Assembly: GCA_964304625.1 (NCBI GenBank)
Contig: OZ199838.1
Location: forward strand, 8,331,594 to 8,395,593
DNA: 64,000 nucleotides
Origin: Kudoa neothunni
Lineage: Eukaryota; Animalia; Cnidaria
Direction: 5' to 3'
The notes under the pieces are model-generated. The model ran no database searches. It saw only the letters and a list, made by a program, of their open reading frames with translations, and had not been told where the DNA came from. Made by a program: the position numbers and the translations under genes. Below, in pieces: positions 16,701 to 55,537 of the stretch; position 1 is the stretch's first letter; each line of letters opens with the position of its first letter.

Positions 16701-19700
16701 AGTACCATGTATTCGATGAGAATAAACGATGAGGGGTGGTTTTTCAATGCATCCAGAACGTCAAGGAAATAGTCCATTTTTGGTTTAGGCATGTAGAAAA
16801 AATTATACTGCCGTAGATACTTCATTAGAAGTAAGCCGTAACTAGGATGTCTAATGTTGATGTAGAATATTCGTAATATCATCATTTCCGTCTCGAGTGG
16901 AAGTTTAATGTTTGATTGTTCTCTATAGATGTATATTTTTTCGAGAATGTGTATCAATTTTTTGAGAATGTGAGATCTATCATAAAAACCCTCCGATCCA
17001 ATGATATCCATCGTAGTTGTGTTATTTTTGACGCTATTCATAACGGACATATTGTATATATTTTTAAGATGGAAAAATTCCATTGAGGATTTTATTCCAA
17101 ACAGAAGAACATGTGCGATGGTGAATTTGTTGGAAGTTAAGGTCATTTTGAATAGTAATTCTAAAATAACGCGGGTTGTGGTGGTGTTTTTGGATGAGAA
17201 CAAAACTTTATGTGGCTGTTTTAAATTCAGGTCCAAAGTGTTTGTTTGAGCATTGTTAGATTGCGGCGATTGAGTGTCGTCAACAATAACAGAAATCTCT
17301 TCGCTAATTCGAAAAGAAAATCCAAGAACTAGTTTCGAAACTTGAGACTCATCCGAAGTGTACAGACTGACCAGATGTGTTTGGATTTCGGCTTGATTTT
17401 GAATATTTTCATTGAGAAGAAACATTAACGCCCCACACACAATGTCATCAGGTAGAAGCTTATTACAACAGATATCAACCAACGAACGAAGTACATCAAA
17501 TTGTTTGTCGTCAGCCAAAGAAAACAATAACGCGGAAAACTTTCTCGGTGGCAACGACAAGCGTGATTCCGATATCACTTGCGAGATTATAGATTCACAA
17601 TCAAATATGTAACCAAATATGTGGAAACAATGACGAATAACATCACAGTAATAAGTGAAATATTCGTGTTGACGATTGATATTCTCTAGTATTCCAGTAT
17701 TGTAAACAAAAAGATAACAAAACGACCTAATAACTGAACTATCGCTAAGCAATTTAAACAAAAGCGAATAGAGACATGCATCCGAGTACGGCAGGTCGAT
17801 ATCGCTCACTAATTTACTACTGCACATAGTATTGGCATTGAAGTAGGCCATATTTGATAGAATCGTTTTCAAATATGGCACTTTTAATTGATAATAACTA
17901 AGCACATCACGTATCAATCCAAAACATCCAAAAACATAATGTATCTGCTGGAGTTCACTTTTAAAACTATAGAGCTTACAGTTCGGAAACATCTTCTCCA
18001 AGAATAGTACATATATCTCGTAGAATAGTCTTGACTGGTCAAGAGGAGCACTATCACATTGAGTATTCCAACCTATCCAAAATCGTAAGAACGAAATTAT
18101 TTCTGTTACAAATTTGTAACTGCCACTAAGACTAACAGTTATATTCTGTTTGATTGATTTGTAAAGGCGCAACTGAGTGGATGGTTCATGTAACAACTCA
18201 AACACTATCATGGCACATTTATCGTTTCGTGAAAATAAACGAAACAACACCAATATTTTTGTCTGTATTTTAACAGAGTTGGAATTGAAATACAAAGCTA
18301 TAAGGTCAAGAAGAAATGTGTGTTCCACACTTTCCACAACATCAAAAAATAGCTGACAGTTGTACGAAAATAGGTTGCACAGTAGTTTGAGAAAACTGTT
18401 CACCACAAAATAATCAAAGGTACACAATAATTGTGAGGTGCAATTTTGTGATTTGATGGATTCCCATTGAATCAATGTGGACGAAATAGTAACAGAAACT
18501 TGTTTCCCTTGCAACAACTTATTGATAATATCAATGAAAATGTCAATATTGAAAACATTGCTTATGGTTGCATTTTCGTATACCACCTCATGGTTTTCCA
18601 TTAGTGAACTTAAATGCATAGCGGTGGTTTCGTTATAACAGAGGCGATTGAGCACCTTAGCACACACCCCATAAACTTCTCCAGAATTTACATATTGAGC
18701 AAGATTGACAATAAATTCCGACAAAGGATTCTATATGAGAATTAGTCATTCTTGATAGTGATAAAAAAATTGTTAATCGATTATATGAACGTATTTGTTG
18801 AGTATAAATAAAGATATTTCCCAAATTAATTAATAATACAAATGCCTTCCTCAAAAAAGAAAAATTAAAGAGAATTACAATGAAGTCTTAAATTTAAAAT
18901 CGAAATTTAAAAGAAAAGAATTAAACCGACTAGTTAATATTTTGGTGTTGAGTACGTGTGCGTAGTAAAATAATGAATTTGTAAAACTCAGTTGGATACT
19001 TCGAGTAATTATTATGAAATTAATAAAAATAAAAAATAATTTGATCATATTTGTACATATATATTTGTAAATGTGAATTATTGAGTGAAATAAACGTTAA
19101 TATCAATATGACCAAGAGAGTAAATAAATAACGTGATATAATTTCAACTTATATGACAAAGTATCTGACGCCTTAATTACAGACCGACGTTCGTTTGTAA
19201 AAAATGCATATATTTGGGTTTGTACGCAATTTTGTTTAAAATTTTATTATTTTCGCTTTTGATTCGTGTTTCATATCAGATTTTTGGCTTGAAGAGTATT
19301 CATGTTCACACGAATGCATATTGTTTGTTTTTTTAATAGGCAATTCTTTGATAGAAAATAAAAAATTGGCATTACAATCACAAAACGTCATTGGTCGTAT
19401 TAATATAAAATATGGCACGATTAACATCAAATGGATTAATATAGACAAAAGTTAATGATGAACAAATTAGTATCTCTTCCATGTGCAATGTAAGCAATAA
19501 AAAGGTTGAGTATTCTAATCTGACGGATGAAATAAATTCGAATGTATCTGATAAAATGATTATCCTATGAAATAATTTCTGCACATAAAAAAATAAAAAC
19601 TTAAGTCGTTCTAATTATTATGAGATGGAAAAATACTTTAACACAATTTTATGAGGGTTGGGCAACTCTCATGAGAATTAAAATTTTCGAATACAAATGA

Positions 19701-25700: not shown

Positions 25701-28700
25701 TTGTAGACAAACGTTAATTTAATTATAAAATAGAATCCTAGTTCATTTTCTAATTATACATAAAGGAAATAGTTTCCAAATAATACGTTTCGTATTATTT
25801 CTCATAATCAAAAAATGTCTTGAATTTTTTCCATTTTCAGAACATGTTTTTCGGATAAAATAGACTTTGGATTGCACATGCGATATTGAATATCTTGTTC
25901 GGTATTACTCTGAGCTTATTTTAATACCTCCATAAATGTCTGCAAGCCAGCATGGTTCTGATCGAATCGGTTACGAAAATGACAGTTGAATGCTTCTGCT
26001 GAATTTGAGGTATGGTTTATTCCCTCAATAACGCGATCGAAAGCATTCCAATTTTCTGTTGAAAATCTTGAACAATTTGTAAAAATGTTTTTGAAATAAG
26101 TTATAAACGATGCTAAATTGACATCAACGAACTTGTTTCTTATATTTTTCAATTTGGTAAACTAATAGCGGACGAAATCTAATGGAACAAAGGCTAGAGA
26201 CAAGGAACATTTGATTTACATTTTGAAATCAGCGTTTATTTCATATACTTTAGAAAATCCTTCTTATTGCATTCGTCTCCAAATACATTGTCCAAAAGGG
26301 AAACGGCAAAATTTTATGGGTGTTTCTTTTGATGCTTTTTTAAAAGCATCAAATACTTGAAACTCAAACTCTATTATCCAAAATTTGGGAAACTTCACTC
26401 TCTTAATCTTGAGAATGGACAAAACTTTGGTATACATTGCTTCGGTTCTATTTACCATTAATAAATAGATGAGTGGAAAATCCTTGCCAAATGTCCTCCA
26501 TTGAATCATGTATAACTGTGAGAACTCTCTTGGCACCGCTTTGAGCGTTCCATTCGATATCCAGACTTCTGAATTATTCAAGTGTACAAGGTTTTGGGGA
26601 GTAGACAAAATTAGGGCATGTTAAGTATCCTTGGAACCGGAGTTGTATAGCATTAAATCTTCATTTCTGAATGATTTGATATTTAAGTCGTATAAATTGG
26701 ACTCGTAGTTGACCTAGATGGAGCCCCTTATTCTAGAATTTTGAATATTTTTATAGATTGAATTCTTTGAAATAATCGTGAGATCATAAAGATTGATAGA
26801 TTTTGTAGCCATAGAATAAACTTTATTAGGTGGATATTTTGTACTTTCAGCCAAATCCTTTATTTTTTGATTAAGAGTAATTTTTTTAATTTCATTATCG
26901 GATAGAGAGTGATTATGGATTCCTCTTTCTTCAATTCTCAAGGTAATATCCAATGGAGAAGTGCTATGCCTTCCTTTACATGTTCTGTATTGACATCTCC
27001 AATATTGACTGTTACCATTAGAACAATCCTTCACATAATAAAATCTATTGAACACGAGTTTACCTCATTTCTTATGGGTTTAAATAGCAAATAATTTGGT
27101 TTATTAGAATTAGATTTACTAGACATGTTGAGTCTTTGTTAGGGGGCATGCGCCAAACAATACTAACATGTGTAATCGTCGACGCGCGTTGTGCGCACGC
27201 GTGTGGAGAGGTGCCGACGAAAATAAACTTAGGAATACGAATTACATTAGGAACAAAATTTGCGACATCGCCGAAATTTAAACATGAAAATCCAGCCAAA
27301 GTATGTTTGGGGCAGTAAAGGATTTCTTAATTGCAGTCGATTGAAGTAAAAACCTTCATTTTAAATCTTCTAATAGGAAATAAATATAAAAGCTTATCGA
27401 CTAGAAAAAGAAAGGGTAACATAACGAAATTAAGACAAAATGAACGTGTCACTTTAGGAAGAAATTTTTGATAGAAAAACGCGAAAATTAAAGAAACCTT
27501 AATTCTCGAGCATAAGCATTTTATACCTTCGTTTTACAAGCGCATGTAATTTAATAATTCAATAAAAATATCCCTATAGCCTCCAGATGATAATATAAAA
27601 TTGTACAAATCATCAAGATGCAGGCAAAAAATATATTATAAGAAAAAACTTAAAGTACAAAGAAATCTATTATGCTCGTTAAAACGCGCGCACAAGTTAG
27701 CATACTACGAAGTGCATGTGTTTTATCAACGCCACCTTAGCCGCGCAACCAAAAAATATGATTCGCTATTCTACAATATTTTCATTTTTGAATTATAACT
27801 ATTACATAAAAGAAAACTAAAATATTTATAGAAACAGAATTTATTTATACGTTGAGACGAATTACTGCACAATATTTTCCATTTCAAAGCATCGCGTGTC
27901 ATGCGCATGACATTAAATTAATCCAATTAAAATTGAATAGGTGACCTTGGGCTCCACGAGCCCATCTGAGTAGTAAATTGAGCATAATTAATTCAAAAAA
28001 TGTTTTTTTTCATTTCAGTTGTTAAAATATTATTTTACATTTAGTTGTAGATTTTCAATGAATTCGAAATTTTTTATTTAACCGATGTTCACCAAAAAAG
28101 GATTATGACAATAGCAATATGCTTTATTTTATTTAAAAGTTAACCTCACAATTGCGCAATATGTGTATCAGTGTCATGTTTGAATTTCTCAAATCAATTA
28201 TCTACCGACAACATTGTTTAGTGGATTTATTCGTTTCTTAGATTGTAAGCCACCAGAAATGAAGAGCTGAAGACCAACAAAATCGGATGTCAACCTGACA
28301 TCAAGCGTTCTCTTGAAGCAGTTAGGTTTAAATTCAACAAGAATAATTCGTCATTTACGGAAAATAACATAAATGATCGGAAACGATGTAGTTTATGTCC
28401 TGCATGTATCATAAGGCGGGACAAATAAGTATGCCATGTGTGTAACAATAGTATATGTAACGAACATTCAATAAAAAAATTACCTGTTTGAGTGTCCCCC
28501 AAAATAAATTATTTATTGTATATCATACATTTTTTATCACGCAAATAACGTATTAAAGGAAGCAAATACAGCTTAAAATATAATGAATAAAGGATAGAAA
28601 TTAATAAGGGTGGCCTCGTCGAGCCCAAGGTCACCTAAATTGGGAGCGCCAGAAGATCACTTATTAAGGGTTAAACACATCAACCACACGATAAAGCTTA

Positions 28701-30463
28701 ATAATGACCCGACAAATTCCGTAACAATTATTTATTATTTATTTAATAGAGAAAAAAATCAATAGATCAGTATATTGATATGCAACTAAAATTAAAAAAA
28801 TTAATTATTCAGCTGACTTAAACAAACCTTATATTAAAATTGAAAGGGAATTACTGTAGGTTGAAATTTCGATAAGATACACTTCACAACAGTATGCATC
28901 CATTCACCAATGTATTTCTAAGTAGAGAACAATATAAAACGTTGTAATAGAATAACTCAAAAATTGACTATTACATTTGAGTAGTACAATTGGAAGGTGG
29001 TGAGAAAGTGTATGGTGGCGTCAAAAGCCCCAAGGCAAATGGAATTTTCCAAAATTGCAATAAGATGATGTTTATCCATCGCGGCATTGGTTAAACTGGG
29101 TTGGAGAAGTTCGGTGCACGAAATTACCGAAAATAAAGCTAAAGATGCAAGTTCTTTCCGAATTATATTGTAGATATCGCGCTCCAGCACAAACTTTTGT
29201 AAAAATTGGTTCACTTGATATGCCAACTGCATGTCCACAACTTCACCTAGAAAATCCATTTTAGCCATCATAGCTCAAAAAACACATCTATGCCTTTTAT
29301 AAAATTGAATGAAGCTATCGACATCACCAACGATGAATACAATCCAGATGTAAAATGATCCATCGGATTTCTAATGCACATGTAATCATCACTGTGGCAA
29401 CTGTTAGCTGTGGATTTTTTTATTCGTTCTTTCCAAGCTTGATAGAGTTGAAGACCGAATTCGAATGATTCAAACGAAAATTTAGACTAAATCAATAACT
29501 TCAACATGTATAAAACGTAAATATGAATACAATGGGAGCTAGCAGATTCAATATACGAACAAATGATTTTTGTTCATTGTACATAAGCATTAAAACTTTG
29601 GATTTCCATAATTCGAGAGCTTTTGGGCACTGAAAAAAAGGTCCAATATCATTTGATAAAATATCTTGACTAATTTGTTTGGGTTTATTGTCAGCATTCA
29701 TTAGGCCATTAACGTAATGTTGAATGAGTGAAAAAATAGCATGATATTTTGCCTCATAATTGATCATATTTTCAAAAAAGCTTTTTTTCAATCCCTTCTC
29801 CTTGAGTATTTTAATGGGTGCGAAACGAAACAATTCAAAAAATGCTGACACTAATGTCAGTTTGTCGTTCAATCCAGGATCTGTGGACGAATTTTTTTTC
29901 GATGATATCGACCGCTGAAGACTTTCAATCATGTCATTATCAATATCAAAACTTAGAATAAGTTCACACGTCTGATAGTAGACAATAACGAATTCAAGGT
30001 ACGAACAGAGCACTATACTAAGCTGAGGATGGAATGGATATTCTTCTTGGCATTCCGTCGATAGTAACGTCAACTCAATCGCGAATTCTTCGCCCAAATT
30101 TAATAGCTTTGCGAAACTTCTAGCACATTGTTTCATATCGAAACCCAGTTGTTGATTCGATTCAATCAAACCCTCAGATGAAACACCACCTGAGCTAGTG
30201 TTGTAGAAAATTAAATTGTTAAGAAATTCACTAAACGTCGACGAAATAGTCTTGAGATTATATTCCAAATTGATTTTGGATATATATTGAGAAATAGGAG
30301 TGGGATCGCCATCAATAGCATATTGCCTTAGGAAAGAATCGATATCACTTAGAATAACATGTAGTATTCTAATCTGCAAACATTTTCCTTCATTACGAAG
30401 TTAAAAAAATTTAAAAATAATAAAAGTACCCTTAAGAATTTGTCCACTGGATACTTCCGCCAT
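13705..30463 (-). CDS. NUP205: Nup205/Nup192-like nucleoporin, multi-exon
   Basis: ATG at 30463 and a phase-consistent short intron into ORF 30379-29501, whose ARSFAKLLNLGEEFAIELTLLSTECQEEYP...VLCSY resembles the Nup205 N-terminal motif as recalled; ORF 29271-28957; donor at 28854 (phase 0); acceptor before 18730 (phase 0) into the 1429-aa helical ORF; ORF 14417-13965; short exons to a TAA at ~13705. Total roughly 2000+ aa. Confidence 0.7.
19920..21706. mobile_element. TIR DNA transposon relic (MULE-like termini) inside the Nup205 intron
   Basis: TIRs GGCAGTGTCTGTTTTGCCGGACGC / GCGTCCGGCGAAATAGACGCAGCC; 9 bp flanks ATTTTAAAT / ATTTAAAAT (8/9). No long ORF. Confidence 0.7.
23088..24925 (+). 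mobile_element. Degenerate piggyBac-family element (copy 2), internally deleted
   Basis: Inverted ends AGTGCTTTTGGGGGTCTATTAGACCCC / GGGGTCTAATAGACTCCAAAAGCACT; homology to 352-1337; RW...FYN.DI..NAF.LY and Cys-rich C-terminal remnants at 24020-24330. Confidence 0.75.
25740..27075 (-). pseudogene. MULE/Mutator transposase pseudogene with N-terminal FLYWCH-type zinc finger
   Basis: YWRCQYRTCKGR...HNH; W.SNGTLKAVPREFSQLY; PLIYLLM.NRT...Y; C.F.FGQCIWR; WN.FDR...TSNSAEAFN; split into three ORFs. Confidence 0.85.
27921..28670 (+). mobile_element. piggyBac-derived non-autonomous element
   Basis: Inverted TAGGTGACCTTGGGCTC / GAGCCCAAGGTCACCTA; right end GGG|TTAA; Cys-rich C-terminal remnant (RKRCSLCP...CHVCNNSICNEH) at ~28378-28470. 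Confidence 0.7.
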
Positions 30464-30561
30464 TATGATGCGCACGGTTTGTGATAGACGAATACTGTAC
30501 GAGTCACGGCGATTTGAGGTCAAAAACACCGGATCATTTTTTGCCACTAGAGAATATAAAA
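30464..30561. promoter_or_regulatory. Putative bidirectional promoter between Nup205-like and Nse1-like genes
   Basis: Only ~98 bp separate the two inferred divergent start codons. Confidence 0.5.
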
Positions 30562-31587
30562 ATGGAGTCAGATATCAAAGTTAAACTTTTACAATATGTT
30601 TCAATCAACTGCGTTTGTTATGAGGAAATGCTGTTGAGTTATTACCATAGTATAGCCGGAGGTTTATTCAAATATTTTACTGTTATTTTTTACGTCATTT
30701 TGTAGAGGAAAATAAATCAATTAATGCAAAAGAAATTATAAAGGAACTTAACGAAGTTGTTTTGGATTTGAATTTAACGATAAAACGATGCCGATCTGAA
30801 GTCGATGGATCGTGGTATTATGGAATTGTAAGATGATTTTTTTAACCGTGTTTGCTCATTATATGCTATTTTTATGTAGGTTAATGAATATCCAGCCGAG
30901 TCTACTATAACAAATTTACACTTATCACCACAGAGTTTACGAATATTTTTTTGTGTTGTATGTGGTTGTGATTGAATGGTTTGGTTGCGAATAAGTAATA
31001 TTAGTTGAAACTTATGGTTCAATCTGATGGATATCTAAAAAATTCATCTTTAAAGGAACACAACGCTCCAGAAATTAAAGATTGTTCCAATGAAAATTTC
31101 CAGGTATATTACATAGATTATTTATGTCATATGTTTTTGTGTGAACTTAATTTATATTTTAGTATTGTCTGAATGAGCTGGTTTTGTACAGCTATTTAAA
31201 GCCCGTAATTTGTTTATATAACAGGATTTATTTATGCTTTTATTGTTGATGGATAGTATGAAGATGGTTATACGTTGGGCGATAAAGCACTGCTAGATTT
31301 AAAATCCACATTAAATCAAATATTTCCAGAAAATATTTACATGTGTGAATTGTGTAAAGATATTGTCATATTGGTAATCTCCTTTTTTCAATTTATGGTA
31401 ATGCGCTCTTAGAACGTTAAATGTACACAGTGTGATAAGAGAATGCACAAACATTGTTGTGAGCGTATAAACAAAACGTATATAATATGTAAATATTTTC
31501 CGCGTTAACCTTTACTTATTTAGTGGTAATTCCTTTTGTTCCCTTTGTATCGGAAGTGAAATCAAGATTGAAGGCGTGAATAATTAA
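30562..31587 (+). CDS. NSMCE1: Nse1/NSMCE1-like SMC5/6 subunit with C-terminal RING-like domain, ~7 short exons
   Basis: Spliced reading gives MESDIKVKLLQY..., IKELNEVVLDLNLTIKRCRSEVDGSWYYGI, YTLGDKALLDL and CELCKDIVIL-NVKCTQCDKRMHKHC...CSLC, matching the Nse1 winged-helix plus RING layout; 30-60 nt GT-AG introns. Confidence 0.8.
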
Positions 31588-31878
31588 ATTTCTCGTCTAA
31601 ATTAATTCTTTAAAATACTCTCATGTGTAAATATCACAGGATGACTTTTTCTTTTAAGACGATTTAGTGTTTTTTCATTTGTTAAGTGTTTTTTTATGGT
31701 GATACGTTTGAGAACTATTTTAAGGTTAAGAATTGTTAATACTTATTTGAGAAGCTTCTTCGGCAAAAAATAACTTCTAGCGCGACAAATTTTGTAGTGT
31801 AATACTATCTATGAATGAATTGGTTTGATAAATTTTTAAAAAATAGTTCATCTTTTTAGTGAGTACTTTTCTCTAGTA

Positions 31879-33296
31879 CAGTGATTCTCAACTGTGGGAG
31901 ATAAAGTGACATCAGAATTGGATAGGGGGAATTTTTGCATTATATGGTTTGGGACGTACTTAAGGATATCTAAGAAATCATATTATTCAATGCTGTTAAA
32001 CTCAATAAGAATTTGGCAGAAATGGTTCAAATGTTTTTAGTAATATGTATTAAAAATTATTTATGGAGTTACTATATGCCTTTTACGTTTATAGAGCTAT
32101 TATCGGTCTCTTTCTTTGACGCCTCTTTTAGCGATGTAATCTAATAATAATACTTCAAATTGCTATCTGCGTGATAAACAATATTTAAGCGTCATTAGTC
32201 TTGACTATTTTTAATTATTTCTGACCCCTAGGAGGGAAGGAAGGTCAGAAATAATTTAATGTAGAAGAACCTATTAAAATTAAATCTGCAGACAGCTTGT
32301 GGGTAGGGCGTCCAAACCTTGGGTTTTTTGGTTATTTACAAAACTTGTAGATTATTGAATTCTTCGAGATCAATTTATAAATAATAACTTTTAGAATTAG
32401 ATATAATAATTATATTTATTGTTTTATTAATGGTGGGAATTAAAATTATTCGAAATTTTGAAATACCACGATCGTCGGCAACGCGCTGTCTACCGACCCT
32501 TGGATAATTGTTATTTAATCAATTATTCTTATGATTCTATGATTGTATCTTGGTATTTCAACACTGTCATAAAATGTTCTAGTTTTTTTTAATAACATAT
32601 TTTGGAGTTATTAACATACATTATTTTAAAGTATGCGTGAAATTTCAAACGGAGATCAAAAAAAGCGTTGGATAATATTTGCTCCGATCAAGATTCTAAG
32701 TACAGAACTTCCAGCTACCGCGAATATTGAACGAATTTTTGTATTAATGAACACAGTAAAAACTAAATAAACCAACTCATTAAAGGCTGAAACTGTAAAA
32801 TGTAAACTTCTCGCAAAGCAGTTGATCAGAAGAAATAATAATACGTGTTTGGCGCCACATCCAAAGAATAAACTAATACATGATGTGAGCCAACGATACC
32901 CTGAGCGCTTAAAAAATAGATCAAGCTTCTTAACTGAGGGTTGTGAAGATGATTAAGACGATTCAATTGACGACAGTAATTAGAAAACGCGTTTAAAATA
33001 AAAATTCTTGTTATTTTAATAATACTATTATGTTTTCTTTGCGACCTTGGGTTTTTTCTGATAGTCTCATTGGACGCCCTGTTTGTGAGTTAGAGTTGAT
33101 AGGATTAAAAACTGTCATTACACAAGCGTAAGTGCCTTTTTAGGATTAGAATTTATCATGTAAATATTTTCTGCCTTAGCAAAACCAGTATTAAACCTTA
33201 AAGTAGATATGAATTTGGCTTCCAAATTAAAGGGGTAACTTTATATTGTTCACCAGGTTGAGGGGGTAAATTTGACAAAATGGTTAACAACCCCTG
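31879..33296 (+). mobile_element. hAT (Charlie-like) non-autonomous element
   Basis: TIRs CAGTGATTCTCAAC / GTTAACAACCCCTG; 8 bp flanks CTCTAGTA / CTCTAGAT. Confidence 0.7.
32304..33081 (+). mobile_element. Nested hAT deletion derivative
   Basis: TIRs TAGGGCGTCCAA / TTGGACGCCCTG; flanks CTTGTGGG / TTTGTGAG; hATC remnant ANIERIFVLMNTVKTK at ~32718-32770. Confidence 0.75.
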
Positions 33297-34599
33297 CTCT
33301 AGATAATTTAAAAATGTTTGGTTAAAATATATTACTCACTTGTTTGTGGATAGTAGGTAGAATACAATGCATTCTTAACTGTAAGAAATATATTAAGATT
33401 ATGTCTTAATACGTTCTGGTGCCATATGACCCCAAACACTCGAAGAATAAATGAGGAATGATATTTTATTCATTATTAGCAAACATTATGTATAAAATAT
33501 ATATTTATTCAAAATAATATGATTGTTGTGGTTAATAATTTTTTATCACATGATAACTAAATAAAATAATGACCAAATGTCTAAAAAATTGTTGTAGGAT
33601 TTATAATTCATTGAAATGTCAGAATAACGGGATAAGCTCTGATCATTTCATTTCATTAAGAAATGTTTTTTTAATTAAACGACAATTAAATCCTAATATA
33701 TCCATTAGGGAATGTATTAGTCCAGAAATTTCCAAACTATAGTTATTTTAGATACAAATATTTTTTAAATTAGAAAAAAATACAATGTAGCTCTAATTGG
33801 ATAAATTATTCAAAAGATAAATTTATCTGGAAAAATTCTTTATTCGCGTAAATTAAAGAAGCATGATATTAATATAAGTAATTATTTATTGAAATCCACT
33901 TTCAAAAATTTGTGTAAGAGTTTAACTCGCTAAATCAATATATTCAGGCACGAAAATAAACACAATTACTCTATGGTTCCGCAATGGCGCGAGAGATGTT
34001 ATAATCAAAAAATATACATAGGGTCCCAGAGTAGGTAATGATAATACATTATCGCAGTATTAAATTTACCTTTGTGTATGATCGTATTGATTGTTTAGCA
34101 TAAATAGACAATAGATTATGAGTTTATTATAAATGGTAATTGTTGTATCCTCGCAAAAAGCCAAAGAAACACTAATTGAGTTGAAATGAGCACGAGAGAG
34201 ACAATTGGTAAATACTAACAAATATTTAAATAGGGTGAGGGGGTCTAAATTCCGATGTTGTCCAGGTCTTCATTTCGACATTTTGCATCGCCGCTTTTGA
34301 TGTTATAACGGTTTCTAATATTACCAATACTGAGAGGTGTATTGGCCCCAAGTTTTTTTACCAAGTCGTAGGTACAACGCTATTGGTGTTATTCATGGGG
34401 AAACCGAGACTAAATACTATTTGAACAGAGGAGGAAATCGTTTTCAATTCTCACCTCTACGGTCGCCCTGGGGATTCCGTTTTCGCGCCAAGTCGCGGAA
34501 GGTCAGAGACCCAACAGTAATCAATGGAAATCGAAAAGAATACTATGCCAAGAAGAAACGATCCAATAATAAAAATCTATTAAAGCAAAAGATCGCTTA

Positions 34600-34634
34600 G
34601 ATTCTTCCGGGGATCGAACCCAGGGCCGCAAGTG
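34600..34634 (-). pseudogene. Orphan 3' half (nt 38-72) of a tRNA-Val gene
   Basis: Minus strand CACTTGCGGCCCTGGGTTCGATCCCCGGAAGAATC, 30/35 identical to nt 38-72 of the tRNA at 39163-39235; intact B box; followed by a TTTT run. Confidence 0.85.
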
Positions 34635-37600
34635 AAAAAATAATCGATAATAAACTAGTTTTTATATCTAACTAAAGTTATTTTTGATGAATAATACGGA
34701 TGACGCGTCGATTGATTGATGGTGCGGTGTTCATGGATAAACCACTTGCATTGAAGGAGTCATATGCCTTTTCCAGGAAGCATATGATGCCTCCAATGCC
34801 GTGGTTGTGATGGAATATTTCAGTTGCTTCATTGGTTTGATCCCTTTGACGCCCAGTTGTCGGAGGATGGGATCGTTGTCGGGGTGATGCGTTCCTAGGG
34901 AGCCAAAAACCAATGCACAGAGTTCAACCTGGTAACCCAAATTTTCTAAGAGCGATTCCTCTCGCAAATATTTTCTAGCTTTGCAATCTCGTACCCTGTT
35001 CATTGCTCCATGCCCTAACTCAAAGCAGACGGTCGTTTCTACCATGAGCATCTTTCTTTCCGCCTCGTTGATAGCAAGTATGTTGGGACGACGGTTTGAA
35101 GCTATCTGTGGGATTTGATGGTTGTAACGAAACTCCCAATTTTTATTCTTCCGAATCTTTTCAACGACGAGCTTCAGGATTTTGTCATGACGTGAAGTTT
35201 GTAGCAATGGGGAATGATTTCAACCGTTGAGCAGGTGACGCAACTTTTCGATCTCGCAGTTGCAATGACGGCAACATTGGTCAGCGGCACGTTTAGATTT
35301 AAAAAGAATTGCTTTGGTTGGAAGAAAGTTAATGCGGTCAAGAATACCGAAGCTGTATGTGTCTAAATCAATATTTCCGGTTCGTATCCAGGAATTCGCA
35401 TGTTTATCATCCACAAAGCATCGGAGGGAGCAACCTTGATCAAACTTTTGGAACCAAGAGAGTAATCTTGATATTTGAATGTTCCATCTAAGTCGTTGGA
35501 TTCTGATGACACGGTTGCTTTGCATATCGTCGAAAAGGCTGGTGGAGAAAATATCGGTTGGTTCCATCAAGCTTGAGGGGTCCAAATCAATACTTTCCGG
35601 GTCATCTTCATCTTTTTGGAGAAGTTGGATTTTGAGGGCTTTCCCGTTGGTTCTGATAGAGGAGATTAAGCTCTTGATGTCCCTTGTAGGTCCCTGTTCT
35701 TTGTCCAGGTTCAAATAGCTTACCGGGTCGAGTGGTTGGAGTTGTGTTCTCTTGACGGTGACTTGCATAAGGTTTTCTCTTGAAATCTTCTTGATTCTTT
35801 CATCTTTCGGGTGGAGGATATTTAGACCAGATAAAAGTCTTAAAGGGTGGTAATCCTCACGAAGTGATCGAATTCCGAGCTCGCCTTGGGATGCTGACAC
35901 GGAACATTCCTTAGTTGGAGAATCTTGGCATTCGCAACCACGAGCGTATGTGTTTAACACTTGAGCGTCAATCTTCTTCAAATCCTCCATCCGTAAAAAG
36001 TCGGATTTCATGGCGTAATAGAGGGTGGGAAATAGATACATTCTAAGCAGCTCCAATTTCATGAAGCTAAAGAGAGGTGATTGGGAAATGTTGTCGAGAT
36101 TTGAGAGGAAATCGTCGAAGCATTTTGGGAGATTCTTAAAAGACCCCAGGTTGGATGTGATGCTGAGGTATTTGTAAAAATCTTTCAACACAGGGATTTC
36201 GATTTTCGACATTTCGAACTTGGGAATGTATCGATCATTGATAATCTTCGCATTGTTCTTGTAGATGAGGGTTAGGGGCGCACATTTGGAGTGGTTAATG
36301 GAAAGGTGATTTTGTTGGTAAATTCTTCAAATTTTAACATAATATCGTCCATGTGATATTTAGAACTTGACATGAAAACAATATCATCTGCATAAGCAAG
36401 AGCAGAGATACTGGAATTGTTGAAAGAATAGCCAAGGTTGGAGTGATCGAGCTCAACAAGGAAGGGATTGATGACGGAGTTGAAGAGTAACGGCGAGAGC
36501 GGGAAGCCCTGACGTACACCACATCCATTCGAACATAGTGTAGCGGAGTTATCAGCTCGGTCAGTCACATTATTGTAGCTGTTGGCACACAGATTCTTCA
36601 GGAGAATGGGTATATTGGAAGAAACGTTATAGTTAGCGAGTTGTAGGTAGATAAGGTTGTGCGGGACCGAATCAAAAGCTTTTGTGATATCGATCCATAT
36701 CACGTAAAGGGATTTTCTTCGTCGTCTTGTGTCGTCTATTTCTTCCTGAAGGATGAATGATTGCTCCATGCAACCATCACCTTGAGTGAAGCCTTTTTGG
36801 GACAGAGAAAGTTTTATTAAACCTGCCAATTTTCTGCACATTATGGACATAAATATCCTATAGACCGTTTGGGTAACTGATATTGGACGCTACTGTTTTG
36901 GATCTTTGGTGTTTGGATTTTCTGACTTGGAATCATGACGAGTCTTGATTCTAACCATTCAGAAGGGATAGATTCATGTTGCTGAATCGAGTTGAAGAGA
37001 GGGATCAAAATAAATTCTAGATTCGGTACACGTTTCCAGAATGTCATTTGAATCCCATCAGTACCTGGTGAAGTATCTTTGTTGGCTCTATCAAGAGCTA
37101 GTCGGACGTCTTCAGGAGGAAAGTAGAAATCGGAATAGCCATCCGCAGGACGGTACGTGACATCATTAAGTTGGCTTGGTTGAGTAGAGACGGTTTCAAT
37201 TGTGATGGTTGTAGTTGGTTCTTCAATATCAGTTGGAAATTGTTGTGGTTGAGTGGTTATCACTGGAGGCGACGCCGGGGAAGGGAAAGGGCAAGGGCTG
37301 AGACGATTTCATCTGGAGTAGCTTCGCATCATTTCGTAATGTGTTCCGTTACTTAGAAGCATCGTTTCATATTTTTCCTGTATAGGATACGGAGGCGGCG
37401 AGTTTTGTTCTTCTCTTCCTCTTGTGGTAAAGGCGGTAAAGGGCGTGGATTAGGAATTGGTGGTGGAGCAATTTCGGTTTGTTGATTAACTCGGGGCTGA
37501 AACAACATACCGAGGGATTTGGCCTTCTCTTTAACACATTTGACGAGTTCACCATATAGTTGTTGGGTTGGAACATTGTTAAGTCTGACAGTTAATTTGT

Positions 37601-39162
37601 CAATTGAGTTGACGTTGTTTTGTATTTTTCAGCGGTTGCTTTCTTAAGTTGACGCCGTTTTTCAGAATAGGTTGGTTGATTTGTTTGGGTTGGATCGATC
37701 TGGGGATGGAAAATTATATCGTCGTTATCATTATCAATATTAGTATTGGTAGGTTGAAGGACATGCTCAGAAGATGGGTTTGGGGTGGCGATTGAGCAGG
37801 GAGATCGATAGTTTGGATTGTTTGAAGATTTACAGTTGAAGCAGGTTCAATAAACTCTTCTTCTTCTGTCTCGAATTCTTCATTTGAACTTGGATTGATG
37901 GGATTATTGCTTTGTTCATGTCTAACATTAGAAATGAACAAAGTAATGTCTTGGGATCTTGCTAGGCAATCAGTGGAGGTTATTCGGGGAAAGGTAATAT
38001 GAGAATTATCATCAACAGGAGTTATTGTTTGGGTTGGTTGTTGACTTTCGGGACTTGAGGTTAACAGAGGGGATTTGAAAGACTGGGAAGAATCGCCGTC
38101 ATTAGGAATTGATGCAGATGGCCATTTTTGCCGTGGATAGTTGAGGGAGTTGGCTAGAGGAGACGTTTCTTCATGTTCTTCGGATTGAGAGACATGAGAT
38201 TTCAATGAATCGACAAATTCTCCTTCATCATCATCATCATCATCAAGAGAAGAAGAAGAATTATCAGAAGCGTTTGGGTCAAAACTGACTTTCTTACTAG
38301 CCAGGTTGAAGAATGATTTGTTGATTGTGATATTTGTTGACGGTGGTTGTTCAGGAGAGGATAAAATTGTGGACATACATGGAGATACCTGGACAATACC
38401 TGATGTAGGGGTGGGTGTGTTGTTAGATTCATTATCATCAGCTATATTTGGTTGGATTGTTGGAGGGTTTGAAGTAGCTGGATCGTCATGATTTTCGAGA
38501 TTTTGGAGAGTTGATTTTTCATTTATAAAAGCAATCTTCGTAAACTTGATAACGATTGCACCTTCATTGGTTTGGGCCATTTCATAAATCTCTGGGAAAG
38601 ACTCCTGCAGAGTACCGTTGTTATAAGATTCTCTTAACAGAGTTTCTATATCATCAGCTAGACGGCACACCTTTTCTTCGAGACTTAAAACCGTCGTTTT
38701 TCAGTTCCTTGCATTGTGGGTACCAGCTTAAGGAGCTCAGTCAATGGTAGTCTCTTGGCTTGGAGAAATGTTGCGGATTCATCAGCTTTCACATCAGATT
38801 CAATATTCACATTTGTAAATTCTTGAGAAGTATCAACAACGGTTGCATCAACCATTTTAGAAGGGAAATCTTTGAGTACAACACGTTGAACAGTGGCGGC
38901 ATGGAGAGCATTCATTCCCTCAAAATGTAGTAACAGTTCGCCATACGAATTTCGCAAGGTTCGATAAAATAAGGAAATTTTAAGTTCTATCGGAAGCAAC
39001 TTGCGTCTCTTTTCTTTTTTATTGAGATATGAGAAAAAAAGACCACATGTCGCGCACGTAATCTCGTATCTCCGCAAATACTAGTCCATTTTTGCTGATT
39101 CAAACGTCATTTGAATCATCCAAAAAAATTACGTTTTCTTAAAATGCAAAAGAAAATCTGTG
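34635..39162 (-). mobile_element. Non-LTR retrotransposon, RLE type (NeSL/R2-like), near full length, frameshifted
   Basis: N-terminal CxxC; RT with SPGTDG, SQKGF..GDGC.E, WIDITKAFDSVPH, GVRQG.PLSPLLFN, LAYADD and YKYL; CCHC-like CRHC...E...HLLN; RHDKI, RRPN, VETTV.FE, K.RKY and GSLG of the restriction-like endonuclease; broken into at least 7 ORFs. Confidence 0.92.
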
Positions 39163-39235
39163 TGATTCCTCCGGGGTTCGAACCCGGGACCTCAAGTGTG
39201 TGAGACTTGCGTGATAACCACTACACTAAGAAATC
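39163..39235 (-). tRNA. tRNA-Val(CAC)
   Basis: GATTTCT TA GTGTAGTGGTTATCAC G CAAGT CTCACAC ACTTG AGGTC CCGGG TTCGAAC CCCGG AGGAATC A: full cloverleaf, A and B boxes, A73, downstream TTTT. Confidence 0.95.
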
Positions 39236-49826: not shown

Positions 49827-52256
49827 ATGGATCAAGATACAGTTTCTTTCACTCAACTATCTGCCGATCGTCTCAACGAAAAACCAACAAACAGCATATT
49901 TAATGACAATAATAATATTATTGATTTTTTAAACAATCCTTCCTTGGAATTTATGTATGAAGAAAAATGGGATAATGAAGAACAACAAGAAAACCACCAT
50001 CAGCAAGCCTATTTCTCGAAGAGATTTTGCGGTTTTAGTACTTTAAAAGTAAGAAAGATTGAGAAAAAATTCACTGATTGGGCCTACAAACACCCTTGGC
50101 TTATATTGATTTGCTTGTGCTATGTTTCGATGGTGTGTACTATGACTGGAATTGGATTCCTTGGAGTGGTTATTCAAGATATTGAGAAGCAATATGGATT
50201 ATCCAGCACACACACTGGGTTTATTTCGGCTTGCTTAGATGTAGCTTTTTGTTTTGGTGCCATTCTTATTGGATGGAAACTCAAGAAATCCGATTTGGGT
50301 TTTATATCGTTAGGTATGGGAGCTGTAACTTTGGGATGCCTTTTGTTTGCATTACCTTTGGCCGTTATCCGAACCGATATCAATATAATTAGCACAAACA
50401 ATACAGCCATATCCGAAAGTCTATGTTTCACTAAAGAAAACCTTCAGCGCATGAAAGTTTCACTACCGATAGATAATAGATACTCAAAAAACAATAAGCC
50501 CATTATTTCTAAGGACCATGAAAATAGAGGCTTGAGTAATAGCTATCGTGCACTTATTATATTCTACGCGGCATTTGCACTCATTGGAATTGGTTCAGCG
50601 CCCGTTTTCATACTTAGTCCAATAATTTTGAAAAATATGTTATCAGAGAGTCGAAGAAGTACCTACTTATCCATATTCTACTTAAGCTCTTTGTTGGGAC
50701 CATCACTTGCATACTTTTCATCGAATCCAATTTTGAAAATCCCTGTATTTCTTAAACCAATCTCGAACACTGATGAGTTTATCGGGGCTTGGTGGATATG
50801 CTTTGTTTTTGGGGGGATTGCATCCTTCGTCGGTTTCATAATTATTTCAATAATTGCCATTTTATTCAACCCATCAGAACAAGAAAACCCTGTTGGTGTC
50901 CCAAGTGTCAGCTACAATTCAAATTTGGGAAATGTACCCGACAACGTTTCTAGTCGAAGCTCACAAAACAAACATAAAAAGTTGACCCAAGTTTTTGTTC
51001 GCGCTACTAAAAATTCATTTAGACATCCTCTGGGTATTGACCCACCATCGAAATTCGAACCTTTATCCCTGCTAGAACCAAACGATCACAATTTGAAAGG
51101 CTTGAAAACATTTGGAAAACTGAGACTAATTATATCGAACAACTGCTACCTATTGGTCTCATTTTCTTCTACATTGATTCAATTTCTTATTGTTGGTTTT
51201 GCGACATTTTTACCAAAATTTATGGAAAACAATTTTACTATTTTACCTGAAAGAGCAGTGATTATTGTTGGATTTATCATGGTGCCTAGTGCTGCCTTGG
51301 GATCTATCGTTGGGGGATTTCTTATACGCAAATTTAAGCTTAGACTGCCGCAAATATGTTTCTTGTGTTTTGTCTGTTCGCTTGTGACAACTGTTGCGAC
51401 GTTTTGTTTCCTTATTCAGTGCCCACCTGTGACCAACGTGACACCAAGTTACTCTTCCCTCAAATACCCCCACAGGTATTTCTTCATTACATTAATAATT
51501 ACAATCGAAATTTAATAGTTCAATAATAAACATCGAAAAATGCTGGTCCCAGTGTGCTTATCCCTGTGAAGACCTACCGTCACAACCTGTTTGCTATCAA
51601 GACAAAAATATTTTATTTTTAAATCCATGCTACGCTGGATGTAGAAGCAACAAACTCGACAATAACCAAGTAGTGTATTTCTTAACGTCGAAAATAATAT
51701 TTTATCTTTAGACTGTATATTTTGATTGTTCTTGCATTGAAGAAAACAACTCTTTTAGTACCAAAATAATTCTTACGGTAGGGAGTTGTTCATTGTATTG
51801 CAACCAAATTATCTTCTTCTCAGTGGTCATGTTTTTGCTCAATTTCTTTATGTTCACTATGTATGTTCCAATGACGGAAGTAACGATGCGGTAAGAACAA
51901 CTCATTTTACTACTTGTTGGATTAAGCTGAATTTAGTGTTGTCAGAGGAAATCTACTAACAATGGCGCTTGGTTTCCAGCAAGTTCTTCAGCGGTTACTT
52001 GGTCAAGTACCAGGACCGATTATTATCGGTAAACTTATTGATTTGGCATGTGTGTATTGGAAAACCAAAGGCTCGGAATCTCATTGTTTTGTTTACGACA
52101 CTGTCAAATACAGGTTTTGTAAAATTTCATTCTTTTAACTTAATATTTTCTAGAATACACATGACGTCCATTGGAGTGCCTGTCTTTCTTGTAAATACAT
52201 TATGTATGTTTACAGCCTATGTGTTCTCCTCGCGTGAAAATTTAGAAGTTTCCTAA
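49827..52256 (+). CDS. Organic anion transporting polypeptide (OATP/SLCO, MFS) with Kazal-like loop, ~5 exons
   Basis: IEKQYGLSS...G, GAWW, GFATFLPKFME; Kazal-like PVC......F.NPCYAGC; QRLLGQVPGPIIIGKLIDLACVYW...C..YD after splicing of ~40-50 nt introns. Confidence 0.92.
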
Positions 52257-53277: not shown

Positions 53278-55537
53278 TGTTACCGGCAATGTATGAAATT
53301 CAGGCAATATATAGAATGCCTAGCATTCTTAAGCAAAGTGTATAATACATGCGTTCTTACATACTCTACCTAGGCATTCTATAAAAAATTAATTACCACC
53401 AAAAAGATGTTCGGGTCGTCATTTTCACGTGATAATAGTCCTTGGGATTAGGTGACGCTACGTAAGTTTGTGCTCATTGCTGTGTGTTTGTAAAAATGAA
53501 CGGAGAAGATTCAAATGTAGCATTTGAAAAAGAATCTTGTTTGATTGAAATGAGAGAACTTTTCCTTACAGAGCTATCAAAAATGCGAACTACTGGTGCT
53601 AAAAATTGTGTTTACCTTACCGACGCCAGTTATGAACGACTAGTGAATGATGTGATAAGAGCAAAGTTAACAACAAAGAAAGGACCACGGGATTATTGGC
53701 TTCTGAAACGCTACGATGTGATGACGATAGAGAAAAAAGCAAGTTGTTCTTTCCTGTCAAAGAAGGGGTCCGTTCTATTCAGTTTTACGTCAGTGATTCT
53801 GAATTATTTGATGTTATTCACGACGCTCATTAGCTATTGGACATGGAGGACGAGACAGAATGTTAAAGGAGCTTCGACCAGAATTTAAAATCATTACCCG
53901 TCGTGATATTGAATTGTACATTCAACTTTGCCAGGCATGCCAGAAGAAACAAAAAGGCATGAAGAAAGGCATTGTAGTGAAACCGATGGTATTTTCGGAT
54001 TTCAATTCCCGTTGTCAGGTGGATCTAATTGATTTCCAATCCCATCCTGATAAAGAATACAAATTTATAATGGTATATCAAGATCATCTTACTAAGTTTG
54101 TTGTTTTACGGGCTATTAAATCAAAAACAGCTGAAGAAGTAGCGTTTAATTTAATAGACATATTCACATTACTGGGAGCTCCATCGATATTGCAGTCAGA
54201 TAACGGTCGAGAATTTGCCAATAAGGTAATCACAAACCTGAAGAAATACTGGCCGACATTGAAGATTGTTCATGGAAAGCCGCGACATTCTCAAAGTCAG
54301 GGTAGTGTTGAGCGAGCTAACCAAGATATCGAAAACATGTTGTCTGCTTGGATGCAAGACGAAAAAACCAACAAATGGAGTGAAGGAATACGTTTCGTCC
54401 AACTTATGAAAAATAGAGCTTTCCATTCTGGGATTCAAAGAACACCTTACGAAGCTCTCTTTGGCTGCGAAGTTAAAGTTGGTCTCACTACGTCTTCCAT
54501 ACCTCAAGATGTTTTATTCGGTATACACACTGAAGAAGAATTAGAAATAATAATTGAAAATATGCACACAATAGAGCTAGAAGATGTGAACCATGTGACC
54601 GAAGAAATGAGCGTTACTCCACAGAACCCTGTTGAGATTTCTGAATACGAAATGGAAAAACAATGCTACAATGAAGAGATATGTACTCAAGAATCTGAAA
54701 GTTCTTCCGTGTGCTGTGTATGCTTAAAAGCAAGTACTGGTGCACATACTTGCATTAAGTATGGTCGAAGCGTCCATATAATCTGTGGGGAAACTCTAAA
54801 AGACGACAATGGTGAAACAATTGGAGGTTATGGTGTTGGTATCTGCTGCACTATTTGTTTTAACATTGAAAATGCGGAAAAACATAAGAAGCTGTCTATG
54901 TTGAGCCTAGAGATTCAAGCAAAAAAAATGAAAATGGCTTCGGACAAAAATTTTTCTCCTGCATCTTTGGGCGATACTGTGCGCATTCCTATTCCTGATG
55001 TGGACAAGGGACGTGGTGATCCGCGAAATGTGTTAGCGGTGGTAATGGACCTTACGGATGATGGTTTTTACCGACTTGGAACTAATCAAGGAAGGTTAAA
55101 GCAGCTATACGCAAGATCACAATTTAGCATTTGCCAACAGCGATTTATAAAAATTGTTGATGTCCCTGACCACGAAATACCTCTTCGCTCTGCTGCTACT
55201 TCTCAATCTACAGGAAGTGGTCAAGGATTTTTAAGGTGTATGTGTAAAACTAAGTGCCAAAATAACAAATGCCTTTGCCTCAAGAAGAATTCAAAATGCC
55301 ATTCTAGTCTTCCTTGTTGTAATAAATAATAAGTTATTGTTGTGCTTCGTTGGTGATTTTTCTGAAGGTTAATTTCGATTTCTTTTTGCGCTTCATTTTT
55401 GATTATTAACCATTTTTTGACGAATATCTTTTTAAATTTGCATATTTGCACATTGCCTGAAGTAGAACTAGTCATTGTATAGAATGCCTAGGTAGAGTGT
55501 GTAAGAATGCTAGGCATTATACACATTGCCGGTAACA
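53278..55537 (+). mobile_element. Ginger2/TDD-type DNA transposon with KRBA2/SCAND3-like integrase, full length, near intact
   Basis: TIRs TGTTACCGGCAATGT / ACATTGCCGGTAACA; 4 bp TSD TATA; HHCC zinc region, QVDLID, SDNGREF and GSVERAN DDE core; C-terminal Cys-rich tail; frame disruptions near 53740 and 53830. Confidence 0.92.

What the first reader, a model, noticed from the sequence alone, without database searches (positions are those of the whole stretch)
34600..39235. RLE non-LTR retrotransposon inserted in a tRNA-Val gene with an intact tRNA retained at its 5' end
Seen: on the minus strand the order is complete tRNA-Val(CAC) (39235-39163), ~75 bp spacer, RT/CCHC/RLE coding region, ~95 bp 3' UTR, then directly an orphan tRNA-Val 3' half (nt 38-72, 34634-34600) with its own TTTT trailer. 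Established: RLE-class elements (R2, NeSL, Utopia) are sequence-specific for multicopy RNA genes and usually disrupt the copy they hit. Inference: this element targets tRNA-Val, and either carries a replacement 3' half plus terminator at its 5' end or makes a ~35-60 bp duplication, so the host gene stays functional. This is the logic of bacterial tRNA-integrating phages and islands, but in a eukaryotic TPRT element. It could be an undescribed harmless-insertion family and a candidate site-specific integration tool. Evidence is a single decayed copy.
Basis: partly seen in the sequence, partly recalled or inferred. Interest (0 to 1): 0.92.

Follow-up and report, generated by a model that had tools for sequence, protein, structure and literature searches.

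The report
Retrotransposon that rebuilds its tRNA-Val target
A dead copy of a site-specific jumping gene lies inside this genome's only tRNA-Val(CAC) gene with a complete tRNA gene in front of it. Relatives do the same at about twenty other tRNA genes, which shows how a mobile element can occupy an essential single-copy gene without breaking it.

Summary
On the minus strand the order is: complete tRNA-Val(CAC), a T-rich trailer, a decayed R2-like ORF (RT, CCHC, RLE), a 96-bp 3' UTR, then an orphan copy of tRNA nt 38-72 with its own T-run.

It is not an isolated copy.
- About 20 loci in this genome carry related elements, many with intact 1,600-2,200-aa frames.
- 17 of those loci have a complete tRNA directly upstream on the same strand.
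- Every 3' junction I could read abuts a 3' half of a different tRNA at about nt 37/38.
- Each half occurs nowhere else in the genome, so the targets are single-copy genes.
- Tandem arrays are (element-half)n behind one intact tRNA.
- All tRNA-flanked elements form one RT clade (support 100).
- The nearest outgroup is U2-flanked (Utopia-like) and has the same "whole gene in front, 3' fragment behind" layout.

Not settled: whether the front copy comes from a long target-site duplication or from an RNA-templated leader.

tRNA-specific RLE elements were reported briefly in 2015. I found no description of this rebuilding of single-copy tRNA genes.

The Val copy itself is dead (frameshifts, stops, RLE catalytic residues changed). 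This scan already noted the same family at other tRNA genes of this genome.

The parts
39163..39235 (-). Complete tRNA-Val(CAC), the 'head' gene. Nt 38-73 are the copy in front of the element.
   Evidence: ARAGORN. Rfam 65.1 bits. It is the only gene of this sequence in the genome; the two other Val genes are 90% identical.
39120..39162 (-). Trailer with three T4+ runs (Pol III terminator-like), which also forms the very short 5' leader of the element.
   Evidence: Read directly. Similarity to the orphan's trailer (shared TCTTTTGC..TTTAA) is weak: 59 of 500 shuffles score as high.
38685..39119 (-). Probable start codon (39119-39117) and the N-terminal conserved helical module, broken by a TAG at 39083-39081.
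   Evidence: Frame reading. Resemblance by eye to the N-terminal consensus of intact relatives.
37714..38670 (-). Low-complexity Ser/Asp/Pro/Thr-rich N-terminal region in a different frame from the previous piece.
   Evidence: No Pfam hit.
36272..37140 (-). Reverse transcriptase. It has a frameshift near 36925 and an in-frame TAG at 36892-36890.
   Evidence: RVT_1 E 1.3e-23. tblastn with intact relative P0002 gives HSPs in three frames.
35220..36311 (-). Thumb/linker and CCHC zinc knuckle. There is a frameshift near 36315. The last Cys codon of CCHC is a TGA (35222-35220).
34731..35207 (-). Restriction-like endonuclease domain. PD is changed to PN and the second acidic residue from D to E. The stop codon is at 34733-34731.
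   Evidence: Alignment with 11 relatives. 34-39% identical to RLE domains of about 37 other copies.
34635..34730 (-). 3' UTR ending in a T6 run that abuts tRNA nt 38.
   Evidence: Relatives end in a conserved TTGTAT(T/A)ATTA-like motif at the same junction.
34600..34634 (-). Orphan tRNA-Val 3' half (nt 38-72). It differs from the head at 6 positions, and one of these (G67 to A) breaks an acceptor pair.
34580..34599 (-). Trailer of the orphan with a T4 run, continuing into the native flank. No older element remnant lies downstream.
   Evidence: blastn and tblastx of 28000-34599 against the element find nothing.

Best explanation
This is a dead, solo insertion of a site-specific non-LTR retrotransposon of the R2 superfamily (single ORF: RT, CCHC, PD-(D/E)XK endonuclease). 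Its lineage targets tRNA-Val genes.

Inferred mechanism:
1. The endonuclease nicks the bottom strand of the tRNA gene between nt 37 and 38.
2. The freed 3' end primes reverse transcription of the element RNA (TPRT). The original nt 38-73 and terminator therefore end up behind the element.
3. The 5' junction forms so that a second copy of nt 38-73 plus a T-run terminator follows nt 1-37. This leaves a complete, transcribable tRNA gene in front.
4. The rebuilt gene can be hit again, which explains the head-to-tail arrays at other tRNAs.

Shown: the architecture, its recurrence, the single-copy targets and the phylogeny.

Inferred: the nick position, TPRT, and the source of the front copy. For that source I put about 50% on an RNA-templated leader (the element RNA carries nt 38-73 plus terminator, or a co-transcript joins by homology). 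I put about 40% on a long staggered target-site duplication of about 55-60 bp.
For: Protein: an intact relative matches solved R2 proteins at E 2e-76 over RT and CCHC/RLE. The window copy has RVT_1 and aligned CCHC/RLE motifs.

Recurrence:
- A T-arm scan finds a tRNA 3' half, on the same strand, 150-600 bp after the RLE ORF of nearly every relative. The tRNA differs between lineages.
- 17 of 20 element clusters have a complete tRNA less than 8 kb upstream on the same strand.
- Head and orphan are the same tRNA, and that sequence is found nowhere else: Val, Phe-like 35/35 identical, Thr-like, Gln-like head plus 7 orphans.
- No complete tRNA lies inside the arrays.
- The second copy of the Val lineage (79% DNA identity) follows another tRNA-Val gene.
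- The same layout occurs in two other samples (L062, L065).
- All tRNA-flanked rows form one clade, SH-aLRT 100.

For a templated leader:
- Trailer variants track the element that follows them, not the one before.
- U2-flanked relatives repeat about 155-160 bp, and that repeat also ends just past the gene's T-run.
- ATGs lie only 44-173 nt after the tRNA end.
Against: - No RNA data: the RNA runs tried held no reads of this organism.
- A flanking duplication does not show which copy is new. An element-borne 3' tail, or a plain TSD, would give the same picture.
- T-runs directly after the tRNA should stop Pol III, which argues against simple co-transcription.
- Long TSDs have precedent in RLE elements: R9 at 126 bp (cited in PMC13580325), and LIN15_SM at about 40 bp as read from S6 Fig of PMC4640811.
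- The trailer correlations could also arise from unequal crossing-over within arrays.
- I could not fetch the head junctions of other loci.
- The Val copy is too decayed to show its own original ends exactly.
Confidence: 0.85

Rival explanations
1. Deletion in a tandem gene pair. This is the explanation Kojima and Jurka gave for Utopia in Phytophthora. The locus would once have held two tandem tRNA-Val genes, and the element entered the downstream one and deleted its 5' half and the spacer.
For: PMC4640811 reports intact U2 genes rather than nt 1-38 fragments upstream of Utopia copies and explains them by deletion. The layout here is formally the same.
Against: - Each target tRNA sequence occurs only as head plus orphans, so there are no free tandem tRNA arrays.
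- The distance from tRNA end to ORF is short and lineage-constant, and the sequence between them is shared by copies of a lineage. It is therefore element sequence, not spacer.
- Arrays of up to 7 halves would need 8 tandem genes.
Confidence: 0.04
2. Element-borne tRNA-like tail. The 3' half would be part of the element's own 3' end. The element would insert just downstream of an untouched tRNA gene, for example by recognising the Pol III complex as Dictyostelium TRE or yeast Ty3 do.
For: A duplication flanking an insertion is symmetrical, so the sequence alone cannot say which copy is new. tRNA-related LINE/SINE tails exist (from my own knowledge).
Against: - The half always matches the adjacent head tRNA (4 of 4 tested).
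- In arrays, half and trailer variants do not track the preceding element. The same 3' UTR is followed by both variants.
- Related U2-specific and planarian tRNA-specific elements are documented to enter the gene itself (PMC4640811).
- A Pol III-complex reader would not be specific to one tRNA species.
Confidence: 0.08
3. Coincidence or dispersed repeat. The orphan would be a SINE or tRNA pseudogene fragment unrelated to the element.
For: None beyond the possibility in principle.
Against: The orphan is unique in 40 Mb, with 0 control hits. The same arrangement recurs at 17 or more loci.
Confidence: 0.01

Closest known systems
Utopia (U2 snRNA gene-specific RLE non-LTR retrotransposons; Kojima and Jurka 2015, PMC4640811)
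   Same: Single ORF with RT, CCHC and RLE, and a precise 3' junction inside a small RNA gene (U2 nt 38/39). The paper reports intact genes, not 5' fragments, upstream in Phytophthora, and tandem insertions. The nearest outgroup proteins found here (P0004, P0005, 30% identity) are flanked by a complete U2 in front and U2 nt 39-end behind.
   Different: The target here is tRNA. The tRNA-flanked elements form their own clade. Utopia proteins carry N-terminal zinc fingers, and none was detectable here. The paper attributed the intact upstream gene to deletion, not rebuilding.
tRNA-specific NeSL-clade families: NeSL-1_TV (tRNA-Pro), LIN15_SM (tRNA-Arg), LIN25_SM (tRNA-Glu), mentioned in PMC4640811 and its S6 Fig
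   Same: RLE LINEs whose 3' end abuts an internal position of a tRNA gene. The LIN15_SM 3' terminus (..TTGTATAATAATAATA..) resembles the TTGTAT(T/A)ATTA terminus here.
   Different: LIN15_SM joins at about nt 25, and its one 5' junction shown ends at about nt 65. That is a duplication of about 40 bp that does not restore the gene (my reading of machine-read text). Planarian and Trichomonas tRNA genes are multicopy (from my own knowledge; not checked here). I had no LIN/NeSL sequences, so kinship is untested.
R2 (28S rDNA-specific)
   Same: Protein homology at E 2e-76 to solved R2 structures over RT and the C-terminal CCHC/RLE. Insertion is presumably by TPRT.
   Different: R2 interrupts its target and relies on hundreds of rDNA copies. 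It has N-terminal ZnF/Myb domains. The clades are separate.
R9 of bdelloid rotifers (126-bp TSD; Gladyshev and Arkhipova 2009, cited in PMC13580325) and SLACS/CRE of trypanosomatids (49-bp TSD, from my own memory)
   Same: RLE elements that make unusually long target duplications. This is the precedent for the staggered-cut reading.
   Different: Those duplications are not reported to restore a complete gene with its terminator. The targets are rDNA and spliced-leader genes.
Bacterial tRNA-integrating phages and genomic islands
   Same: The logic is the same: integration inside a tRNA gene with the displaced 3' part replaced, so the gene survives.
   Different: They use tyrosine integrases and attP/attB recombination, not TPRT. 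This is an analogy only.
Dada DNA transposons (PMC3706591); Dictyostelium TRE and yeast Ty3
   Same: Mobile elements that use tRNA genes as safe sites.
   Different: Dada disrupts copies of highly multicopy genes and makes 6-7 bp TSDs. TRE and Ty3 land beside tRNA genes, not in them.

Membership tests
R2 superfamily (RLE-bearing non-LTR retrotransposons) | Single ORF with reverse transcriptase followed by a CCHC knuckle and a PD-(D/E)XK endonuclease | tested here: met
   RVT_1 hits. PDB R2 matches over both regions. Motif alignment. In the window copy the motifs are present but mutated.
R2 superfamily (RLE-bearing non-LTR retrotransposons) | N-terminal zinc-finger and/or Myb DNA-binding motifs | tested here: not met
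   In the full-length relative P0002, residues 1-820 gave no Pfam hit, no PDB hit and no C2H2 or CCHC pattern. Pfam also found nothing in the N-terminal 380 aa of one own-genome copy (L043). An AF2 model of residues 1-200 is helical, pLDDT 61, with no Foldseek match.
R2 superfamily (RLE-bearing non-LTR retrotransposons) | Sequence-specific insertion with a precise 3' junction | tested here: met
   All readable 3' junctions abut a tRNA at about nt 37/38.
Utopia / NeSL clade | RT groups with Utopia/NeSL reference elements | tested here: inconclusive
   U2-flanked proteins are the nearest outgroup by score. In the tree the three groups meet at an unresolved node. No Repbase references were available.
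Utopia / NeSL clade | Target is the U2 snRNA gene at nt 38/39 (Utopia) or the spliced-leader gene (NeSL-1) | tested here: not met
   The targets are tRNA genes.
tRNA-specific NeSL-clade families (LIN15_SM, LIN25_SM, NeSL-1_TV) | Sequence kinship with those families | not testable with these tools
   Their sequences were not at hand. The only link is the resemblance of the 3' terminal motif.
tRNA-specific NeSL-clade families (LIN15_SM, LIN25_SM, NeSL-1_TV) | Same insertion position in the tRNA | tested here: not met
   About nt 25 in LIN15_SM against nt 37/38 here.
Functional (autonomous) element | Uninterrupted ORF and intact catalytic residues | tested here: not met
   From RT to the RLE end there are two frameshifts and two in-frame stops. 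Further breaks lie upstream, including the TAG at 39083-39081. RLE PD is changed to PN and D to E, and the last CCHC Cys is a TGA.

The most novel reading that the evidence does not exclude
The front copy of the tRNA 3' half and its terminator would be templated by the element's own RNA, and the flanking tRNA sequence in that RNA would also help choose the target. A single mis-insertion could then re-aim a lineage at a new tRNA. This would explain a radiation onto 11 or more tRNA species at one conserved position by proteins that lack recognisable DNA-binding fingers. It would make this an RNA-assisted retrotransposon that repairs its own target, and the U2-specific Utopia relatives would work the same way.
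Probability: 0.3. Interest if true: 0.9.

Novelty: new variant of a known kind. Interest (0 to 1): 0.74.

Why it matters
Site-specific LINEs are thought to survive by hitting multicopy genes, where a broken copy costs little. In this family the targets are single-copy, presumably essential tRNA genes, and 17 of the 38 tRNA genes listed by the search are occupied.

The family survives because each insertion leaves a whole gene in front. The same feature recreates the target and lets arrays grow.

This extends the "safe haven" idea for mobile elements. It also suggests re-reading the intact-U2-upstream observation for Utopia. Intact members, not this dead copy, offer natural TPRT enzymes aimed at a conserved position of tRNA genes without loss of the target.

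Tried and rejected
Head junctions other than the window's were therefore not read. I used coordinates and pattern hits instead.
- Read laying on an array junction (L043): three RNA runs held no usable reads of this organism, so expression was not tested. One DNA contig of 5,625 nt wraps round the stretch, as a collapsed tandem unit would.
- Rfam at E-value threshold on 20 junction loci found no ribozyme or other RNA family. Glocal tRNA models miss the halves.
- The N-terminal 800 aa gave nothing interpretable with Pfam, PDB sequence search, ESM Atlas, or AF2 plus Foldseek.
- Trailer similarity between head and orphan is not significant: 59 of 500 shuffles score as high.
- No older element remnant lies behind the orphan.
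- The Val element has no significant complementarity to its tRNA.
- Organism check with the window's OATP-family ORF found no homologue at E 1e-20. The OATP Pfam hit points to an animal. The name Kudoa neothunni comes only from earlier scan notes and is unverified here.
- More distant relatives P0008 and P0025 showed no flanking RNA gene. Two others had no DNA available.
- Labels 'TrpA-C' in the tree were provisional. That array's half looks Gln-like. The tRNA names other than Val rest on resemblance to canonical tRNAs recalled from memory.
Full report
OBSERVATION. ARAGORN finds one tRNA in the window, tRNA-Val(CAC) at 39162-39235 on the minus strand. Rfam scores it at 65.1 bits. Reading the minus strand gives this order:
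- the tRNA, ending with discriminator A at 39163;
- a trailer with three T-runs;
- an ATG 44 nt after the tRNA end;
- about 4.4 kb of broken coding sequence;
- a stop at 34733-34731;
- a 96-bp UTR ending in T6;
- directly after that, 35 bases (34634-34600) that equal tRNA nt 38-72 at 29 of 35 positions, followed by a T4 run.

The T-arm/acceptor pattern occurs twice in the window where none is expected, and the 5' half occurs once. In the whole 40-Mb assembly the degenerate 35-mer hits only three Val genes and this orphan, with no hit for the reversed control. The orphan is therefore not a dispersed repeat.

THE ELEMENT. The piece 36272-36850 is a reverse transcriptase (RVT_1, E 1.3e-23). tblastn with a full-length intact relative (P0002) lays RT through the endonuclease on three frames. 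An alignment of the C-terminus with eleven relatives shows the C-x2-C-x7-H-x4-C knuckle and the RLE motifs. In the window copy the last Cys is a TGA, PD has become PN and the next acidic residue is E. There is also an in-frame TAG in the RT, and further frame changes lie upstream. This copy is dead. No remnant of an older element lies behind the orphan, so it is a solo insertion with native flank.

IT IS A FAMILY.
- Searching the window's own genome with the RT and RLE pieces gave about 37 matches each at 27-53% identity. Many lie in open frames of 1,600-2,200 aa, and several are in tandem arrays with a period of about 5.6-6 kb.
- A simple T-arm scan of the fetched loci showed that nearly every copy is followed, on the same strand 150-600 bp after its RLE ORF, by a tRNA 3' half with a T-run.
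- The half is a different tRNA in each lineage: Phe-, Lys-, Gln-, Asn-, Ser-, Thr- and Trp-like, plus others. Names other than Val rest on resemblance recalled from memory.
- The element ends in a conserved TTGTAT(T/A)ATTA-like motif that abuts the tRNA at about nt 37/38, the position where nuclear tRNA introns sit.
- No complete tRNA lies inside the arrays.
- A genome-wide tRNA search listed 38 genes (only the best candidates were scored). Of these, 17 stand directly upstream, on the same strand, of 17 of the 20 element clusters.
- Pattern searches show that head and orphans are the same tRNA and that it occurs nowhere else. The Phe-like half occurs exactly twice and is identical. The Thr-like half occurs twice, and the orphan has a 4-nt duplication. 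The Gln-like half occurs eight times, as one head plus seven orphans in one array.
- The Val family has three genes at three loci. Behind one of the others lies the only other copy of this lineage. It is 79% identical in DNA, collinear from the 5' region into the RT, and then cut off by unrelated sequence.

RELATIVES ELSEWHERE.
- An intact relative matches solved R2 proteins at E 2e-76 over RT and CCHC/RLE.
- The protein database holds three close relatives from two metagenome samples, at 82, 66 and 46% identity. Two of their contigs (L062, L065) show the same half-trailer-ORF-UTR-half layout. The third (L066) has no half at its junction.
- The next best hits drop to 30% identity.
- Two of those hits sit between a complete U2 snRNA gene and a second U2 that starts at nt 39/40. 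The repeat ends just after the U2 T-run, and the sequence that follows the front copy is shared by both loci, so it is element sequence. These are Utopia-like.
- In an RT tree of 42 rows, all 21 tRNA-flanked rows, including the Val piece, form one clade with SH-aLRT 100. They are separate from the U2-flanked/sponge group and from R2 proper.

MECHANISM. Arrays of (element-half)n behind a single intact, single-copy tRNA are what repeated insertion into a gene that is rebuilt each time would give. Two routes give the same picture.

(a) Staggered cuts and a duplication of about 55-60 bp. Precedents are R9 at 126 bp (cited in PMC13580325) and LIN15_SM at about 40 bp (S6 Fig of PMC4640811).

(b) An RNA leader that carries nt 38-73 plus terminator, or a co-transcript that joins by homology, as proposed for R2 5' junctions (my own knowledge).

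Three things lean towards (b):
- In the mixed array on contig 2 near 1.0 Mb, trailer run-length variants go with the lineage that follows in 4 of 4 internal junctions, and not with the one before. In the Gln-like array, two halves share an acceptor G-to-A change and a distinct first 30 nt or so of trailer.
- The U2 relatives repeat about 155-160 bp, yet that repeat also stops just past the gene end.
- Start codons lie only 44-173 nt after the tRNA, which leaves little room for a promoter.

Three things lean against (b):
- Pol III terminators follow the tRNA directly.
- Unequal crossing-over could produce the same correlations.
- The window's two trailers resemble each other only weakly.

No RNA data could be obtained. 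I leave this at roughly 50:40.

TARGET RECOGNITION. The N-terminal 800 residues of the intact relative show no zinc finger, Myb or any known domain. This differs from R2, Utopia and NeSL. How a lineage recognises its tRNA is unknown.

LITERATURE. Kojima and Jurka 2015 (PMC4640811) state that NeSL-1_TV is tRNA-Pro-specific and that the planarian LIN15_SM and LIN25_SM are tRNA-Arg- and tRNA-Glu-specific. They also found intact U2 genes upstream of Phytophthora Utopia copies and explained this by deletion. A 2026 review of R2 diversity does not mention tRNA targets. Searches for myxozoan or tRNA-rebuilding LINEs found nothing. Dada DNA transposons rely on very high tRNA copy numbers.

EARLIER NOTES OF THIS SCAN. 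After I had reached the family reading, the scan's notes showed that other agents had described the same family at Cys, Gln, Lys, Asn and Trp genes of this genome and named the organism Kudoa neothunni. I could not verify the organism. An OATP-family ORF points to an animal, but its homology search was blank.

VERDICT. This copy is a dead member of a tRNA-specific, target-rebuilding clade related to Utopia. I rate it a new variant of a known kind.

Noticed in passing
L063:3474-9096 and L064:1329-6522 (metagenome contigs of sample ERZ25072490): The nearest outgroup elements have a complete U2 snRNA gene in front and U2 nt 39/40-end behind. The repeat stops just after the U2 T-run. This is the same 'rebuilt target' layout as at the tRNAs, and it may call for re-reading the deletion explanation given for Utopia.
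   Followed up: partly
L062:100-160 and 5140-5195; L043 about 2270-2305: Just upstream of the start codon, Gln-like lineage elements carry intron-like signals: AG|GTAAGT, then a CTAA(C/T)-like branch site, then a T-run ending in AG. A motif TCTAACGRT lies about 70 nt after the tRNA end in many lineages. This could be a retained 5' UTR intron or a splice acceptor. It is unexplained.
   Followed up: no
L066:3540-3600: In one contig of another sample, the end of one element's ORF joins almost directly to the acceptor-like T-run/AG and ATG of the next element. The 3' UTR, tRNA half and trailer are all missing. It could be a spliced read-through product or a deletion.
   Followed up: no
L030:1729-3234 (contig 3, about 9.742-9.744 Mb): The second Val-lineage copy is cut off inside the RT by foreign sequence. 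That sequence carries the palindrome GGTGCCATATGGCACCAT twice and a piggyBac-like reading frame at its end.
   Followed up: no
window 57763-58689 (-), 53860-55329 (+): One ORF is a piggyBac-type transposase (DDE_Tnp_1_7, E 8e-56). Another has an integrase core plus a SCAND3-like zinc finger (weak hits). These are other mobile-element genes in the window.
   Followed up: no
window 14435-18724 (-): An uninterrupted 1,429-aa ORF with no Pfam hit at all.
   Followed up: no
window 49827-51515 (+): An intronless 562-aa OATP/SLCO-family transporter ORF (E 5e-57). This family is typical of animals. A homologue search was blank at E 1e-20, so the protein is very divergent.
   Followed up: partly
contig 2, 7.585-7.589 Mb (L041/L045): One unit of the Gln-like array is only 3,661 bp long but keeps its normal 5' leader. 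This is an internal deletion, not the 5' truncation usual for LINEs. I saw no 5'-truncated unit in the arrays I examined, which may reflect selection for insertions that restore the tRNA.
   Followed up: partly
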